Assembly (NCBI GenBank): GCA_020891255.1
Contig: BQFW01000007.1
Span: 682,001-746,000 of the forward strand
DNA: 64,000 nt
DNA from: Entomortierella parvispora E1425
Lineage: Eukaryota > Fungi > Mortierellomycota
Reading direction: 5' to 3'
Shown here: one piece after another, positions 19,593-25,800 of the stretch
Layout of the letters: every line of letters starts with the position of its first letter
Position numbering within the stretch: the first letter of the stretch is position 1
The notes under the pieces: model-generated
Database searches by the model: none
The model's input: only the letters and a program-made list of their open reading frames with translations
Told to the model about the DNA's origin: nothing
Program-made: the position numbers and the translations under genes

Positions 19593-19867
19593 GTTGCAGG
19601 ACTATATCGCGTAAGGGCCTCGCGTTGCCTGGTGAATGGAACGTGTTAATTCAGGTTGCATTTCTTCTCTAATTCTTTTTGTTGATCCGTCCTTCAATAG
19701 AGCTACAGCCTACCTGGCAACGCTACTGTTGTCTGGGGTATGAGGGGAGGGTGAGGGGAGGGTAAGGGAAGAAGCAAAGGTGTTGTGAGGGACGGTCAGG
19801 AACGTTTGTTTTTGTGCATTGTGATGACGTGCTGATTTTGTGCACTAAGGGAGAACTCAGGTCAATG

Positions 19868-19960
19868 CACGTGATGGCACGTGGTGGCACGTGATATTTG
19901 GTGGCAATGTTTTTATGGGGGGCACATAAGGTAAATCCTCCCTCGACTACTGCTCACGTG
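19868..19960. promoter_or_regulatory. CACGTG (G-box/Pho4-type E-box) cluster upstream of the SPX-SerB gene
   Basis: CACGTG at 19868, 19878 and 19888 (exact 10-bp period, inside the MULE end), plus one at 19955 outside the element. Confidence 0.55.
19938..19946. repeat. right target-site duplication of the MULE (CTCCCTCGA)
   Basis: Identical to 15562-15570. Confidence 0.75.
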
Positions 19961-20232
19961 ACGAATTGTGAGTCTGCCTTTTTTTCAGTCTGGTAACTTT
20001 GAAGATAAGAGATCCCGATCAAGGTCTTTTTCACCGTACCCCGCACTCTTGCTCTTTCCTCTCTTGGCTCATTGCCTTCTTCACCTTCCTTGTCCTCTTG
20101 CTTCCTCCTCCACCTTTCCCTTCTTCCTCCCTTCCCTTCCTCCCATTTCCCATTAGCTCTCTCCTGCTCTCAACATTCGCTTCATTGCTACACCGCATAC
20201 TGAATCTCATATACCTGCCTACCTGATCACTC

Positions 20233-22775
20233 ATGAAGTACGGCAATTACCTTCGCGAGCGAAAGACCCAGCTGCCTGCTGAATGGCAAAAGGTCTTTAT
20301 CGACTACCAGGGGCTCAAGGACTATATCAAGACCAACATCGCCCCCGCCTGTCTCAAGCCCACCCTTGCCTCGGCCTCAGCTTTCCCTCCAGGAAGCCAA
20401 ACCGCAACCCCAGTTGTTCCTGGAGCGACTAATGCGGGTCTTCAGGCTTCGCTTCTTCCTGCGTCCGGCCTGATGGCCGATGTTGATCTTCAAGAGTTCT
20501 CGACAATGATTGCCCATAGACTGACTGTCCTGCAAACAGCCGTGCCAGAGTTTTTGGCCCGTCTTGACAGCCAGGTCACCGAGGTCTCTGCTTTCACGAC
20601 TCTTCAGACCCGCAAGATCTATGAGGCCTATGGCGCTTTCCAGGGAGGTCAGGTTGGACTTGGCCTTGTTTCCTCTCAATCCAACACCCATCACGAGGAC
20701 ATCCACAGCACCCCCGTAGCCAACTCCAGTACGGACAAGGCCACACCTGCATCGGCACAGGACGACAACTCACTGGAGAGCTTACTCCAGTCTGTGATCA
20801 AACTGGAAAAGTATATTTTCCTCAACTACACCGGGATTGTCAAGATCATCAAAAAGATGGATCGTCATGCAGGTCTGGGCATAAGCGGGGCCTATCTCGG
20901 TCGTGTCTGGAAGCTGCCCTTTGCCCGTGCTGAGCAATTGAGCTCGCTCAAGAAGGAGTTGATGGAGAAGCTTAGCGGTGTGATGACTAGAGTGACCGTG
21001 AACACCGAGACGGCCATTGGACGACCAGGTACAGCACACGTTTTCATTTCTCTTGTATTGCCATCCCTTGTCATGTTTCTCAGACGTGTGTGCGTGTGTG
21101 TACAACAAGTGCAAGGTGTTGTTGTGTGTGGTTTACAGTTGTTTGTGATGTCCTTATCAGCAACACCAACGGACATATGCCAGCAATAGCCGATCTGGCT
21201 CCTGTTGGTAAAAGAGGAGCAAAAAAAAAAAAAAAAAGAGTCATACTTCTGCCGATTCCAGACTGTGATAGGATGACACCGAGGCTGATCTTCAAATTTC
21301 CTTTATTTGTTCCACGGATAGCTCTGGACGCGCCATTCTCGCCCCTGGCCTTGAACTTCAAGTCAGACTCACCGGTCATGATGTGGAAGCCAACGGCTTT
21401 GGCACCCACAGAGAAGACCTGGTTCCCCCCTGCAGCCTTGTTGCCTCATCAGCGTGTTCTCATCTCGATGAGCGGACCCCACGGAACGGATATCATTGGC
21501 ACCTTGCTCGCCTGTGCTGCCAAATACCAATGTGAAGTCGAGGACTTTTCGTTTGCCCGTCTCTACCACAACGTGACCTTTGCGATTCTGATCACGATCA
21601 AGAATGACGACATGGATATCTTCAAGGATCTGGCCGCTGCTGCAAAGCGTTGGGATGCGACCTTGACATTTGACATTTTGGATTCGCTTAAGAAGGACCC
21701 TCACTTTGGAAACTATGTGCCTCGATCGCTTGAGGATGCGCCCTATGAAGGACGTCTCAAATACACGGCCACAGTTCTCTGTCAGCATGGCTTGACTTCA
21801 GCTTTCCTTTCAGACTGGACCCACTTGTTGTTGGTCAACAAGATCTCTGTGGAAAAGATGGTTCGATTGAACGAGGGACAGCTCTCCTGTGCGGATTATA
21901 AGCTCTCGATTCCTGCCAACTTGAGCATGGACAAGTTCAGGGAGGAGCTCTTCCAGCTGAGTGCCGATCATGGAACGGATGTGGCTCTTCAACCCTATGA
22001 TGTCTTCAGGAAGCACAAGCGATTGGTCGTCTTTGATATGGATTCGACCCTGATCCAACAAGAGGTCATTGATGAGATTGCACGCCACGCTGGCGTCATG
22101 GAGAAGGTTTCGGTAAGTCTCGTCTTTTTTCATATTTAGTCTGCATTGCGGTGATGATTCTCCAGCTCACTAGTGCATTTCCTTTTCTCTCCGGTTACTT
22201 AGGAAATCACGGAGGCTGCCATGAATGGCGAGATTGACTTCAAAGAGTCTCTCAAGAGACGAGTGGCGCTCTTGAAGGGCACGCCAGTGAGTGTCCTGGA
22301 GACTGTCAGGGAGCAACTGACTTTTACGGAGGATGCTCTCTACCTTTGCAAAGCACTGAAGAAGATTGGATTCAAGTTGGCGGTCATCTCAGGAGGATTC
22401 ATGCCTTTGGCATTGCATGTAAAGAACATTTTGGGATTGGACTACGCTTTTGCCAATCAGCTCAAGGTCTCGCCCGACGGATTGTACTTGACAGGAGAGA
22501 CGGTGGGACCCATTGTCTCCGGAGAGCGCAAGGCCGAGTTGTTGGAAGTCATCGCTCAGGCGGAATCGGTCACGTTGGATCAGGTCATTGCTGTGGGCGA
22601 TGGAGCCAACGACCTTTGGATGTTGGCCAAGGCTGGTTTGGGCATTGCCTTCAACGCCAAGCCTAGGGTGCAGCAGAAGGCCCGTGCAAGAATCAACCAA
22701 AAGAGTCTCAAGTACGTATTGTACTTGCTTGGATACGAGGATGCAGAGATCAGACAGTTGGCGACCAGTTCATAG
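20233..22775 (+). CDS. serB: SPX-domain / tandem-ACT / phosphoserine phosphatase (SerB, HAD) fusion protein, 3 exons
   Basis: SPX N-terminus MKYGNYL...IDYQGLK...LNYTGIVKIIKKMDR and two ACT-like segments. HAD motifs VVFDMDSTLIQQEVIDE, VISGGF, RKAE and VGDGANDL. Introns 21029-21321 and 22113-22202 join all parts in frame. Confidence 0.9.
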
Positions 22776-22885
22776 AAAAAGACATAGATTCGATTTTTTT
22801 TTAATAATAGACTCACAGTGCAAAGAGAAAGGGTATATGTTGTACAATGGTGTAGGGGGGTTTCTATCTTTTTCGTGTTTTTTCT

Positions 22886-25800
22886 CTAGATATATCCACC
22901 GGGGGATGGATGTTGACGCGATGGCGGCTGGTATTGCTGAGCATGATGATCAGCAAACGGGTTGTTGTGTTGGTTGTCGTTGGGATGGGCAAAAGGGTTG
23001 CCACCAGCGCCATTCGTACTTCCAGTCGATCGACGATGAGGATTTTGTCCATCCTGGTAGACTGGTGGAGGGGCCGACAACGGGCCCATGGGGTATTGCT
23101 GAGGTGGGTATTGTGAAGGAGAAGGGACATAGCCTGCAAACTGGTAGCCATTGGGGTCCTGCTTGTAATAATTGGGGTCGCTTTGCATCTGTCGTCGCCT
23201 GTCCACACATCCAGCGCAGCAACAGCTCCAGACACAGCAGAGAAACATCAGGCCGAACAAAGAAACGACTGGGACCACGATCCACAAATGATTCTTGGCC
23301 CAGGCTAAAACACCGTTCACGCCACTGCTGTACTGGCATTCACCTTGGTTGCACGAGCCTCCAAAACCACAAGATGTCCCATCCAAGAAAAAGACGCCTG
23401 GGATCTGCATGCAACTGAGTGCAGCGCCCGACGGGTCGTTACAGGTCAAGGCGCAAGAAGTGGACGCACCACATTGCTTCGTGATGCCTGGACGATCTTG
23501 TTGTTGACACTGCAGATCACGGGAGGTGCAGACACCATTGGCGCATTCCAGTCCTGAGGTGGCAGTTCCGTTGCTACCCTGGGTCGTTCCATTGCATGGC
23601 GTCTGATTCGCGAGATGCTCGTCGGCTGGGCAGGTGGCGCTGGTGCCTGAACAAACTTCTTGAATATCGCATTGCGAGATGGACGGTCGACAGACCTGTC
23701 CCTGGGGCTTCAATTTACAATTCAGACAACAGTCATCATTCAAGTCATCACAAACAGCGCCACCCTTGAGTTTGCAGGTCGTTCCATCACAGCAGGGATC
23801 CTTGGCACAATCCGCTGCCGAACCACAGTCGCACTCCTCTCCAGGCTCCTTGAGTCCGTTGCCACAGATGTTGCTTTGTGAATTTTGAGTGCTCCGAGTC
23901 CCTGGTGGCCTTAGACATTGACCGGACGAGCTCTTGATGGTGGCGCAAATGGTCTTGATGGAACAAGGAGAGAATTGCTTTGTAGCTACGGATTCTGAAG
24001 GGTTCATGATGTAGTTTGCGCCGGCATCACAAGTCGTCGTTGACAAGGGGCAACATTGACCAGTGGCGACGCCATTCGCAGCACAGGTCTGTGAATTGCA
24101 ATCATGAATGGCTCCGAACCCATGTCCAATCTCGTGAGCGACCACCATCCATTCGTTGGGCGTGATGGACGACACTCCGGTGCCGGCCGTGTATTGAGTC
24201 TGACCTATCTGACCCTTGACATCCTGGGACAGGGCCTTCATCTGACAAAGAGCTTTTGTCCAGGCGATCCCGACCACGGGGCCAGAGTTGCATTTCGTCA
24301 TGAGATGCCATAATCCTGCGCCGTCGTTGGCTCGGCCGCCCTGTCCTCGCCAAAAACTGAAGTCGCTGAGGCGCTGATCGATCGCATAGCCTACTGAACA
24401 ATCCTGGTTCCACGCTTGGCCCTGGACGGGGGTGGTAGGACAACCGTCGGGGACAATGTTGAGCGTGATGACCCCCAGGGCCACATTGAATGTGCTTTCG
24501 TAAATCCCAGAAGCAGTGTTGAAGTCTGCAAAGATTTGTTTCCGTGCTTCTGCAGCTCCCTTGTAGGAACGGACATAGGTACAATCTGCTGCCACTCCCT
24601 ATTTTTAGTCAAAGGTCAAGAATTAGAGAAAAAAACGTCGTATTCGATTCTTTTTTTTTTTTTTTGCCAAATAAAACATGAGCGACAAGATATATATGAG
24701 CTTCGTACCATATAGTTGACCATTCGGTTGGCGGGACATCCAGAAGGAACTGGGTTGGGTCCTGCAACCTTTAAAGCTACCTCTCGTTTCTGCATCAGAG
24801 GTCCATGCCTGATCACATCCGTCCATGAAGAACTCAAGTCAAAACCCGATGCCATCCGTAAACTGCTGTCGTGGAGGGTGCTAGTGAGATTGGGCGGGTG
24901 ATAGAAATCCTCGTCTGAATAGGAAATGCCTAGACCGCTGGCTTCTTTCTCGCTTTGACCCTGCAACAAGTCTGTACCACATGCAGACTCCTCTCGGGTT
25001 TGTTGATCCAGTCCACGTTTTCGACGCGCGAGATGATTTGGTCGATAAAGATCTGAATCCCGATAAATGACCAATCTCTGTCGCTCGGGGGTCGTGCGTG
25101 GGACCGCATCCTCGGATCGCTTCTGGATATGATAGGTGTCGCCCGTGCTGACATGATAGGTGTCCTCCTGAACCATAAAAGCTCCCCGCAAGAGCAAAGC
25201 ATTGCTAGAAGAAAAAAAAGTGGAACCCCGGCAAAAGTAAGAAAACCCCGTTAGTCTAAAGAGAAAGAAAAACGTTCTGCGATTGAATCAACACTCTTTG
25301 TTTTTGGTTTTTGCTTTCATCCATACTCGTCTTCTGGGTCGTGTTCGACCATCATGCGTGCCCAGCCGAGAACACCTTCCTCGTGCAACATGTGCTCCAC
25401 GGTCCTCTTTTCGGCTTTGGATGTCTTTGAAGCTCTGTCCCATTTCCGATCCGAATGATATTCATCCTGGACCACGATTCCCTTGAATGCCTTAATCTCG
25501 TGTCTTGATACAGGCCGTCCATCAGCATGGTGGCCAAGATCCGCGTCTGGGTGGATCAAATCAAGATTGGGCTCCAGGTGGAGATGGAATGTGGTGTTGA
25601 AAGCACTGAACTGTAACCGAATAGTGTCCTCCATGCGGACGAGACCTGGATCGCCTGCTAGTGGTTGTTCCGGGCTACGTTTCCCAAGAGGGGCTGTTGA
25701 GGGAGCCTTGGGAAGGATGTCATGTCGGAGGTTGAGAATGTGCTCCGAGCGAGTAATGGTTGGCCAGGCGGAAGAGTGGGCTGTAGTGTGTTTTTTATGG

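What the first reader, a model, noticed from the sequence alone, without database searches (positions are those of the whole stretch)
20233..22775. SPX inositol-pyrophosphate sensor fused to an ACT-ACT phosphoserine phosphatase
Seen: in-frame splicing joins an SPX domain to two ACT-like domains and an intact HAD SerB. The SPX part retains the ligand-binding residues (Y25/K29 in DYQGLK and the lysine cluster KIIKKMDR). Established: SPX domains bind InsP7/InsP8 to report phosphate status and are known on Pi transporters, VTC, Pho81, Gde1 and XPR1; ACT-ACT-SerB is the long bacterial form regulated by serine. Inference: the last, Pi-releasing step of serine synthesis would be under direct dual control by phosphate status and amino acid. 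I do not know this architecture to have been characterised.
Basis: partly seen in the sequence, partly recalled or inferred. Interest (0 to 1): 0.75.

Follow-up and report, generated by a model that had tools for sequence, protein, structure and literature searches.

The report
Phosphate-sensor domain on fungal serine enzyme
This soil-fungus gene really does join an SPX phosphate-status sensor to the enzyme that makes serine; the same join is conserved and already annotated across most early-diverging fungi, but I found no paper that describes or tests it.

Summary
Three exons (20233-21028, 21322-22112, 22203-22775) encode a 719-aa protein: SPX domain, about 55 disordered residues, ACT1, ACT2, then a HAD phosphoserine phosphatase. 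It is 100% identical to the GenBank model "phosphoserine phosphatase [Entomortierella parvispora]".

The join is not a splicing artefact:
- RNA-derived contigs of two related Mortierellaceae carry the whole ORF uninterrupted. Their genomes have introns at the same positions, and the first is in the same phase.
- In Rhizopus delemar, residues 1-459 (SPX through ACT2) lie in one exon.

More than 100 fungal proteins share the architecture. They come from Mortierellomycota, Glomeromycota, Mucorales, Endogonales, Basidiobolus, Zoopagomycota, chytrids, Blastocladiomycota, Neocallimastigomycota and an aphelid, with a degenerate relic in Saitoella. Gigaspora has lost the SPX part.

The SPX ligand-contact residues (Y25, K29, K204, K207, K208; position 211 K/R) are invariant in 24 diverse sequences. 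The SPX helices evolve under purifying selection (omega about 0.08).

The proposed control of serine synthesis by both phosphate status and serine is plausible but untested, and its sign is unknown. No RNA run was listed for this species, and six literature searches found no paper on the fusion. I rate it a new, uncharacterised variant of SPX-regulated proteins that is already present in databases.

The parts
20233..21028 (+). Exon 1: start codon, SPX domain (aa 1-250) and the start of the disordered linker (to aa 265 plus the first base of codon 266)
   Evidence: Pfam SPX E 7.9e-14. A profile of 24 orthologous N-termini hits only SPX structures in the PDB, best E 4.4e-21. The AF2 model of aa 1-250 (pLDDT 81, pTM 0.73) matches XPR1, CtGde1, rice SPX1 and Vtc4 SPX domains with TMt 0.72-0.80.
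20305..20319 (+). Codons for Y25...K29 (DYQGLK), the N-terminal part of the basic ligand-binding surface of SPX domains
   Evidence: Y25, L28 and K29 are invariant in 24 sequences from at least 8 fungal lineages.
20842..20865 (+). Codons for K204-I-I-K207-K208-M-D210-R211, the lysine cluster of the long SPX helix (helix 181-213 in the model)
   Evidence: K204, K207, K208 and D210 are invariant, and position 211 is K or R. The stretch aligns to LNYTGLVKILKKYDKRTG of rice SPX2 and VNYTGFYKIIKKHDKMTG of 5ijp, the CtVtc4 SPX-InsP6 structure.
21029..21321 (+). Intron 1 (293 nt, phase 1, GTACAG donor, CTGAT branch-like site, ATAG acceptor, internal A17 run), lying in the linker between SPX and ACT1
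   Evidence: cDNA-like contigs show an intron removed at the homologous position and in the same phase in Linnemannia elongata (368 nt) and Mortierella sp. GBAus27b (152 nt). The public gene model uses the same junction.
21322..22112 (+). Exon 2: rest of the linker, ACT1 (aa 309-385 = 21450-21680), ACT2 (aa 411-490 = 21756-21995) and HAD motif I DMDST (D504 at 22035)
   Evidence: Pfam ACT_6 E 9.3e-9. DSSP shows beta-alpha-beta-beta-alpha-beta twice. Foldseek aligns about 416 columns to M. avium SerB2 (5it0, 3p96), TMt 0.74, E 5e-34.
22113..22202 (+). Intron 2 (90 nt, phase 0, GTAAGT...TTAG) inside the HAD domain
   Evidence: The TIGR00338 profile runs from position 45 to 46 across the junction. 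An intron at the same place is removed in orthologue cDNA contigs.
22203..22775 (+). Exon 3: the rest of the HAD phosphoserine phosphatase domain (aa 530-719) and the stop codon
   Evidence: TIGR00338 serB equivalog scores 199.9 bits against a cut-off of 144.15 on this exon alone. Catalytic residues S592, K639, D662 and D666 are invariant. The Foldseek alignment to M. jannaschii PSP shows 48% identity.

Best explanation
This is one gene of Entomortierella parvispora. It encodes the fungus's SerB2-type phosphoserine phosphatase (ACT1-ACT2-HAD), which carries out the last, phosphate-releasing step of serine synthesis. An N-terminal SPX domain is tethered to it by a disordered linker of about 55 residues.

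Shown here:
- The three-exon structure.
- The four domains.
- Intact catalytic motifs.
- Intact, invariant SPX ligand-contact residues.
- Purifying selection on the SPX helices.
- Conservation of the fusion across early-diverging fungi.
- Physical continuity of SPX and ACT in a single exon in Rhizopus, and in spliced mRNA-derived contigs in two Mortierellaceae.

Inferred:
- The SPX domain binds inositol pyrophosphates or InsP6, as every tested SPX domain does.
- It transmits phosphate status to the enzyme.
- Mycobacterial SerB2 is regulated by serine through changes of oligomeric state at the ACT domains. SPX domains of VTC act through an SPX-SPX contact that PP-InsPs break.
- The most likely mechanism is therefore that ligand-free SPX holds the enzyme in a less active assembly and PP-InsP binding releases it. 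Serine, and with it one-carbon, nucleotide and phospholipid synthesis, would then run when phosphate is plentiful, while serine feeds back through the ACT domains.
- The sign of the effect is my weakest step. The reverse, inhibition by PP-InsP so that Pi is recovered from phosphoserine during starvation, is nearly as likely.
For: Gene model and identity with the public model.

Domains.

Single transcription unit in relatives:
- Logan contigs L002-L004 (L. elongata) and L006-L009 (Mortierella sp.), about 2.3 kb apart from one longer contig (L002, 6.2 kb), carry the complete 723-aa and 693-aa ORFs.
- They lack the two introns present in the genome loci L001 and L005.
- Intron 1 is at the same linker position and phase as in the window, and intron 2 at the same place in the HAD domain.

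Fusion at the DNA level:
- In Rhizopus delemar, residues 1-459 of 649 are in one exon.
- In the chytrid Spizellomyces, residues 136-448 are in one exon.

Breadth: SPX+ACT_6+HAD occurs in more than 100 proteins from at least 9 fungal lineages.

Constraint:
- Y25, K29, K204, K207, K208 and D210 are invariant.
- Omega is about 0.08 on the SPX helices, against 0.27-0.53 on the SPX inserts and 0.02-0.03 on ACT and HAD.

Regulatory precedents:
- L-serine-driven oligomer shifts in MtSerB2 (PMC10564941).
- PP-InsPs disrupting a homotypic SPX contact in VTC (PMC10167327).
- SPX-bound PP-InsPs either activating or inhibiting, depending on the partner (PMC7381174).
Against: - No RNA run was listed for this species, so splicing of the weak GTACAG donor is inferred from homology and from the public model.
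- No binding or activity data exist.
- pTM of the full-length model is only 0.49 and the linker is disordered. No SPX-enzyme interface is predicted.
- The last residue of the lysine cluster is Arg, not Lys, in this species.
- Gigaspora and, it seems, most Dikarya do without the SPX part, so it is dispensable for catalysis.
- The phosphorylated serine pathway is roughly Pi-neutral, which leaves the physiological logic and the sign of regulation open.
- I could not check whether the genome has a second, SPX-less phosphoserine phosphatase.
Confidence: 0.6

Rival explanations
1. The protein is a real fusion, but the SPX domain does not tune catalysis. It might instead bind a partner in a PP-InsP-dependent way (as stand-alone plant SPX proteins hold PHR factors), set localisation or turnover, merely help oligomerisation, or be a slowly decaying relic.
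For: A long disordered linker and low pTM give no predicted interdomain contact. SPX was lost in Gigaspora with the enzyme kept and expressed. It is degenerate in Saitoella (K29 replaced by T, ACT1 loop altered) and in Sanchytrium. Rice SPX1/2, which act by partner binding, are the best sequence matches among solved structures.
Against: Invariance of exactly the ligand-contact residues over several fungal phyla, together with omega of about 0.08 within Mortierellaceae, argues against a relic. Covalent tethering to one enzyme in more than 100 species is most simply explained by action on that enzyme.
Confidence: 0.28
2. The HAD domain is not, or not only, the serine-pathway enzyme. The SPX domain might recruit a phosphorylated substrate such as an inositol pyrophosphate, or the protein might dephosphorylate phosphoproteins, as is reported for moonlighting bacterial SerB enzymes.
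For: MtSerB2 has reported effector and moonlighting activities (PMC4270767, PMC10564941). I could not rule out a second phosphoserine phosphatase in this genome.
Against: Exon 3 alone exceeds the curated equivalog cut-off of TIGR00338. The Foldseek alignment shows 48% identity to the M. jannaschii enzyme, and all motif residues are invariant. Omega of 0.02 on HAD fits an essential housekeeping enzyme. Public sources name the orthologues phosphoserine phosphatase.
Confidence: 0.07
3. Two neighbouring genes were wrongly joined: a stand-alone SPX protein ending at the stop at 21189, and a separate ACT-ACT-SerB gene starting at a Met in exon 2 (MMWKP, about 21377).
For: The GTACAG donor is weak. 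Intron 1 is long (293 nt) and holds an A17 run. An ORF-style protein, P0001 (286 aa, 96% identical), starts at that Met. No RNA run was listed for this species.
Against: Spliced single-ORF RNA contigs exist in two relatives with the intron at the same codon and phase. Rhizopus has a single exon covering SPX to ACT2. The architecture is conserved in more than 100 species. Only about 190 nt would separate the two supposed genes. P0001 runs 41 residues past the end of exon 2, as a prokaryote-style ORF call reading into intron 2 would.
Confidence: 0.02

Closest known systems
Mycobacterial SerB2 (M. avium 3P96/5IS2; M. tuberculosis Rv3042c): ACT1-ACT2-HAD phosphoserine phosphatase
   Same: The ACT-ACT-HAD layout over about 416 aligned positions, 32-33% identity, TMt 0.74. 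The HAD motifs and the SerB equivalog signature are shared. L-serine acts through the ACT domains and oligomeric state (PMC10564941).
   Different: The bacterial enzymes have no SPX domain or any other N-terminal extension. The fungal protein adds about 300 residues (SPX plus linker). Serine regulation of the fungal enzyme is untested.
Characterised SPX proteins: Vtc2/3/4, Pho81, Pho87/90/91, Syg1/XPR1/PHO1, plant SPX1-4, NLA
   Same: An N-terminal SPX helical bundle with the conserved Tyr/Lys surface. It passes the Pfam gathering score and matches these structures by fold.
   Different: All of those partners transport, store or signal phosphate. Here the partner is an amino-acid biosynthetic enzyme that already has its own small-molecule sensor domains. 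This SPX also carries two disordered inserts (aa 51-83 and 139-178).
Gde1 (SPX-ankyrin-GDPD glycerophosphodiesterase)
   Same: It is the other case of an SPX domain on a soluble hydrolase of a phosphorylated metabolite. The SPX of CtGde1 (5ijj) is among the best fold matches.
   Different: It has a different catalytic fold and reaction, yielding glycerol-3-phosphate rather than free Pi. It has no ACT domains. Its pathway scavenges phosphate rather than building an amino acid.
Short phosphoserine phosphatases (M. jannaschii PSP, human PSPH, yeast Ser2)
   Same: The same HAD catalytic core and reaction.
   Different: They have no ACT-ACT module and no SPX. Yeast Ser2 being short and SPX-less is from my own knowledge and was not tested here.

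Membership tests
SPX domain (Pfam PF03105) | Sequence match above the curated gathering score | tested here: met
   52.9 bits against a cut-off of 27.8, E 7.9e-14. A family profile hits only SPX chains in the PDB, best E 4.4e-21.
SPX domain (Pfam PF03105) | Helical-bundle fold with an N-terminal helical hairpin packed on two long helices | tested here: met
   AF2 model of aa 1-250 has pLDDT 81 and pTM 0.73. The top 49 of the 50 listed Foldseek matches are SPX domains (XPR1, CtGde1, OsSPX1, Vtc4), with TMt up to 0.80.
SPX domain (Pfam PF03105) | Conserved basic ligand surface: Tyr and Lys of helix 2, and the K-x-x-K-K-x-x-K cluster of helix 4 | tested here: met
   Y25, K29, K204, K207 and K208 are invariant in 24 sequences. 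The last position is R211 here and K or R elsewhere. The assignment of these positions to the phosphate-binding and lysine surface clusters rests on Wild et al. 2016, cited from memory, and on K127 of Vtc2 being named as a lysine-surface-cluster residue in PMC10167327.
SPX domain (Pfam PF03105) | Binds InsP6 or PP-InsPs | not testable with these tools
   Needs ITC or another binding assay with purified protein.
Phosphoserine phosphatase SerB (NCBIfam TIGR00338, equivalog) | Score above the curated equivalog cut-off | tested here: met
   Exon 3 alone scores 199.9 bits against 144.15. Exon 2 supplies profile positions 1-45.
Phosphoserine phosphatase SerB (NCBIfam TIGR00338, equivalog) | HAD motifs I-IV (DxDxT, S/T, K, GDGxND) | tested here: met
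   D504, D506, T508, S592, K639, D662, N665 and D666 are all present and invariant.
Phosphoserine phosphatase SerB (NCBIfam TIGR00338, equivalog) | Hydrolyses O-phospho-L-serine and supports serine prototrophy | not testable with these tools
   Needs an enzyme assay and complementation of ser2 or serB mutants.
SerB2-type long PSP (ACT1-ACT2-HAD) | Two tandem ACT folds before the HAD domain | tested here: met
   ACT_6 covers ACT1 (35.5 bits against 23). Both beta-alpha-beta-beta-alpha-beta units appear in the model (309-385 and 411-490). The alignment covers the whole 396-residue MaSerB2 chain.
SerB2-type long PSP (ACT1-ACT2-HAD) | Allosteric response to L-serine | not testable with these tools
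   Only the invariant ACT1 loop G317-P-H-G-T-D-I323 is seen.
Single fused gene (as opposed to neighbouring genes) | SPX and enzyme parts on one mRNA or in one exon | tested here: met
   Met for orthologues: RNA-derived contigs in two Mortierellaceae and a single exon in Rhizopus. For this species itself it could not be tested, because no RNA run was listed.

The most novel reading that the evidence does not exclude
SPX-ACT-ACT-SerB is the ancestral fungal phosphoserine phosphatase. It is a direct inositol-pyrophosphate control point on central amino-acid, one-carbon and phospholipid metabolism. Under this reading the SPX/PP-InsP phosphate-signalling system reaches beyond phosphate transport and storage in most non-Dikarya fungi, including arbuscular mycorrhizal fungi and Mucorales, and was later lost in Gigasporaceae and most Dikarya.
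Probability: 0.5. Interest if true: 0.75.

Novelty: new variant of a known kind. Interest (0 to 1): 0.6.

Why it matters
Every SPX protein studied so far moves, stores or signals phosphate, and most are membrane proteins or large complexes that are hard to assay. Here the sensor sits on a small, soluble enzyme with a simple colorimetric read-out (Pi release) and a well-studied bacterial counterpart. That makes it a convenient system for asking how ligand binding to an SPX domain is converted into a change of activity.

If the regulation is real, it links phosphate status directly to serine. Through serine it reaches one-carbon units, nucleotides and phospholipids, which are the cell's main phosphorus sinks.

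The fusion is present in arbuscular mycorrhizal fungi, where phosphate handling is central to the symbiosis, and in Mucorales. Natural SPX-less versions (Gigaspora, Dikarya) offer ready comparisons.

That hints that early-diverging fungi use SPX domains more widely on metabolic enzymes than the yeast and plant literature suggests.

Tried and rejected
- **RNA evidence for this species.** The look-up of sequencing runs listed no run, so read laying could not be used.
- **Two-gene model.** The alternative was an SPX ORF 20233-21189 plus a SerB gene starting near 21377. I rejected it on orthologue cDNA contigs, the Rhizopus single exon and conservation.
- **P0001 (286 aa).** This looked like a separate SerB start. 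It reads 41 residues beyond exon 2, as an ORF call through intron 2 would.
- **Other long SerB relatives (583-1115 aa).** I checked nine for SPX: P0036, P0039, P0076, P0077, P0080, P0087, P0110, P0117 and P0147. None has it, so the fusion appears confined to the fungal clade. P0024 (463 aa), scanned in the same call, has SPX+ACT_6 and is probably a partial model.
- **Literature.** Six full-text searches combining SPX with phosphoserine phosphatase, SerB, ACT domain, Rhizophagus, Mucoromycota, or Pho81/Gde1 found nothing on this architecture. Two papers on fungal phosphate signalling and its evolution do not mention it.
- **CACGTG boxes upstream of the gene.** I considered them as Pho4-type sites. 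Eight of the nine in the window sit at the two ends of the MULE transposon, so they are transposon repeats first of all.
- **Word search with window pieces.** I did not run it. Its length window cannot see 720-aa fusions from pieces of about 265 aa. I used the exhaustive representative search instead, then the word search with a full-length orthologue.
Full report
**What is in the sequence**

Reading 19800-23200 on the plus strand gives three pieces that join in frame. Exon 1 is 20233-21028. Intron 1 is 293 nt (GTACAG...ATAG, phase 1). Exon 2 is 21322-22112. Intron 2 is 90 nt (GTAAGT...TTAG, phase 0). Exon 3 is 22203-22775. The joined ORF is 2160 nt and encodes 719 aa with no internal stop.

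Pfam finds SPX in exon 1 (E 7.9e-14, 52.9 bits against a cut-off of 27.8). It finds ACT_6 in exon 2 (E 9.3e-9) and the HAD families in exon 3. The NCBIfam serB equivalog TIGR00338 matches profile positions 1-45 at the end of exon 2 and 46-219 at the start of exon 3. Exon 3 alone scores 199.9 bits against a cut-off of 144.15, which fixes intron 2 exactly.

**Whose gene it is**

An exhaustive search with exon 2 found close relatives of 610-810 aa in which the match begins at residue 190-290. They therefore have an N-terminal extension of the right size. Pfam finds SPX above its cut-off in four of ten tested, and below it in three more.

A word search with one full-length relative listed 120 proteins, almost all with precomputed Pfam SPX+ACT_6+HAD hits. 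One of them, P0167, 'phosphoserine phosphatase [Entomortierella parvispora]', is 100% identical to my spliced model over all 719 residues. The window is therefore from that Mortierellomycota species. The public annotation already uses the same exon structure.

**Is the join real?**

No RNA run was listed for this stretch, so I tested the join in relatives.

- For the 723-aa orthologue of Linnemannia elongata, three Logan contigs (two of about 2.3 kb, one of 6.2 kb) carry the complete ORF uninterrupted. The genome locus is 2637 nt long.
- For the 693-aa orthologue of Mortierella sp. GBAus27b, four such contigs exist.
- Aligning contig to genome shows three blocks with two gaps: 368 nt and about 89 nt in L. 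elongata, and 152 nt and about 98 nt in Mortierella sp. These contigs come from spliced RNA.
- The first intron has GTAAGT or GTAAGA donors and interrupts the codon just after ...ALSRS or ...AIRRS. That is the position and phase (1) at which the window's intron interrupts the codon just after ...AIGRP.
- In Rhizopus delemar, residues 1-459 of 649 (SPX, both ACT domains and the start of HAD) lie in one exon at 100% identity. In the chytrid Spizellomyces, residues 136-448 lie in one exon.

The fusion is thus a fact of the DNA in other lineages, not a product of gene prediction. I put the two-gene alternative at about 2%. Its only support is the weak GTACAG donor, the long A17-bearing intron and an ORF-caller protein (P0001) that reads through into intron 2.

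**How widespread it is**

The architecture occurs in the following groups:

- Mortierellomycota, in many genera.
- Glomeromycota: Ambispora, Geosiphon, Diversispora, Rhizophagus, Glomus and Funneliformis.
- Endogonales.
- Mucorales: Rhizopus, Mucor, Phycomyces, Absidia and others. Umbelopsis also has it.
- Basidiobolus.
- Zoopagomycota and Kickxellomycotina: Syncephalis, Thamnocephalis, Coemansia and Smittium.
- Chytridiomycota: Spizellomyces, Phlyctochytrium, Rhizophlyctis and others.
- Blastocladiomycota: Paraphysoderma and Sorochytrium.
- Neocallimastigomycota: Piromyces.
- An EukProt transcriptome entry (code 'Partr'), which I take to be an aphelid.

Saitoella (Taphrinomycotina) keeps a 613-aa version with a partly degenerate SPX, in which K29 is replaced by T. 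No other Dikarya appeared among the 120 best hits.

Gigaspora, Racocetra and Dentiscutata have 403-430-aa proteins without SPX. In Gigaspora margarita there is no SPX-like coding sequence within 4 kb upstream, and an RNA-derived contig has stop codons in frame before the start. This is a true loss.

Nine other long SerB relatives (583-1115 aa) have no SPX. The simplest reading is an ancient fungal fusion with later losses.

**The domains in detail**

An AlphaFold model of the whole protein, built with 24 orthologues, has mean pLDDT 75 and pTM 0.49. It shows the following:

- SPX helices at residues 3-50, 79-136 and 181-248, with two disordered inserts (51-83 and 139-178).
- A disordered linker at 250-304.
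- ACT1 at 309-385 and ACT2 at 411-490, each beta-alpha-beta-beta-alpha-beta.
- The HAD domain at 500-719.

Foldseek's best matches are the Mycobacterium avium SerB2 structures. They align over about 416 columns, cover the whole 396-residue chain, and give TMt 0.74, E 5e-34 and 32-33% identity. Shorter SerB and PSP enzymes follow (sequence-level match).

The SPX part modelled alone has pLDDT 81 and pTM 0.73. Its top 49 of 50 listed matches are SPX domains: XPR1 with and without InsP8, CtGde1 and CtVtc4 with InsP6, rice SPX1, and yeast Vtc4. TMt reaches 0.80. A profile of the 24 N-termini hits only SPX chains in the PDB.

**Is the SPX part still a sensor?**

Across 24 sequences that are only 28-67% identical in this region, the invariant SPX positions include M1, K2, Y25, L28, K29, N198, T200, K204, K207, K208 and D210. 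Position 211 is always K or R. These are the Tyr and Lys of helix 2 and the K-x-x-K-K-x-D-K/R cluster of helix 4. They align to the same motif in rice SPX1/2 and in the InsP6-bound CtVtc4 SPX domain. Their role as the ligand surface is established knowledge (Wild et al. 2016, cited from memory; K127 of Vtc2 is named as a lysine-surface-cluster residue in PMC10167327).

Among three Mortierellaceae, pairwise dN/dS was as follows. Synonymous sites are saturated, so the values are rough.

| Region | dN/dS |
|---|---|
| SPX helices | about 0.08 |
| SPX inserts | 0.27-0.53 |
| Linker | 0.16-0.33 |
| ACT domains | 0.03 |
| HAD domain | 0.02 |

The SPX domain is therefore maintained by selection on exactly the residues that bind ligand. 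The HAD motifs (D504, D506, T508, S592, K639, D662, D666) and the ACT1 loop G317-PHGTDI are invariant too.

**How it most likely works**

The following is shown: one polypeptide, an intact enzyme, an intact SPX surface and long-term conservation. The rest is inference.

- In M. tuberculosis SerB2, L-serine acts by shifting the enzyme among oligomers of different activity through the ACT domains (PMC10564941).
- In the yeast VTC complex, PP-InsPs activate by breaking an inhibitory SPX-SPX contact (PMC10167327).
- The INPHORS model expects ligand-bound SPX to activate or inhibit depending on the partner (PMC7381174).

My best guess is that ligand-free SPX biases the enzyme towards a less active assembly and PP-InsP binding releases it. 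Serine supply for one-carbon, nucleotide and phospholipid synthesis would then follow phosphate sufficiency, with serine feeding back through the ACT domains.

The opposite sign is nearly as likely. Under it, inhibition at high PP-InsP would be relieved in starvation so that Pi is recovered from phosphoserine.

I give 0.6 to 'functional PP-InsP-binding regulator of this enzyme' and about 0.28 to a role through partners, localisation, stability or none. I give about 0.07 to a different substrate.

**Comparison with what is known, and novelty**

The C-terminal 420 residues are a member of the SerB2-type long phosphoserine phosphatases. The N-terminus is a member of the SPX family. Both memberships were tested by curated scores, fold and motif residues.

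What is new is the pairing. Characterised SPX partners are phosphate transporters, the polyphosphate polymerase, Pho81, Gde1, E3 ligases and stand-alone plant proteins. None is an amino-acid biosynthetic enzyme, and none has ACT domains.

The sequences and their Pfam domains are already public and are named simply 'phosphoserine phosphatase'. Nothing is new at the sequence level. Six full-text searches and two papers on fungal phosphate signalling and its evolution gave no mention of the architecture. That library lacks most subscription journals, so this is 'none found', not 'none exists'.

I did not check it, but it fits a wider use of SPX on enzymes in this fungus.

**Verdict**

It is a new, uncharacterised variant of a known kind of regulatory module, widely conserved and easy to test. 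Interest is 0.6.

Noticed in passing
The right-hand cluster lies 270-365 bp upstream of the SPX-SerB start codon. CACGTG is also the core site of Pho4/NUC-1-type bHLH factors (from memory), so the insertion could have altered regulation of this gene.
   Followed up: partly
window 21221-21237 (inside intron 1): There is a run of 17 A inside the intron that separates the SPX and ACT exons. The orthologous L. elongata intron (L001:3815-4182) also holds A10, A8 and T9 runs. A possible intron-retained SPX-only isoform, ending at the stop at 21189, was not testable.
   Followed up: no
L014 and L015 (Gigaspora margarita): The Gigasporaceae orthologue is a 426-aa ACT-ACT-SerB without SPX. There is no SPX coding sequence within 4 kb upstream, and there are in-frame stops before the start in an RNA-derived contig. 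It is a natural SPX-deletion variant, useful as a comparison.
   Followed up: yes
P0019/P0270 (Saitoella, Taphrinomycotina): This is the only Dikarya lineage seen with the fusion (613 aa). K29 is replaced by T and the invariant ACT1 loop GPHGTDIIG by GDTDLKAV, while LNYTALAKILKKHDR is kept. It looks like a version in decay.
   Followed up: partly
P0039, P0077, P0087, P0110, P0147: These are SerB relatives of 840-1115 aa with an ACT_6 domain about 350-550 residues upstream of the HAD domain, separated by unassigned sequence. Their origin and the inserted part are unknown.
   Followed up: no
window 22886-24595 (minus strand): A convergent neighbour ends only about 110 bp from the SerB stop codon. 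Its 569-aa ORF has an HEIGHGFGAIHD zinc-protease motif followed by a Cys-rich, disintegrin-like stretch and a transmembrane segment. By eye it looks like an ADAM-type metalloprotease. No family scan was run.
   Followed up: no
L002 (L. elongata RNA-derived contig, 6.2 kb): One assembled RNA contig runs from the SPX-SerB mRNA straight into the convergent RecQ-helicase gene on the other strand. That suggests overlapping 3' ends of the two transcripts in that species.
   Followed up: no
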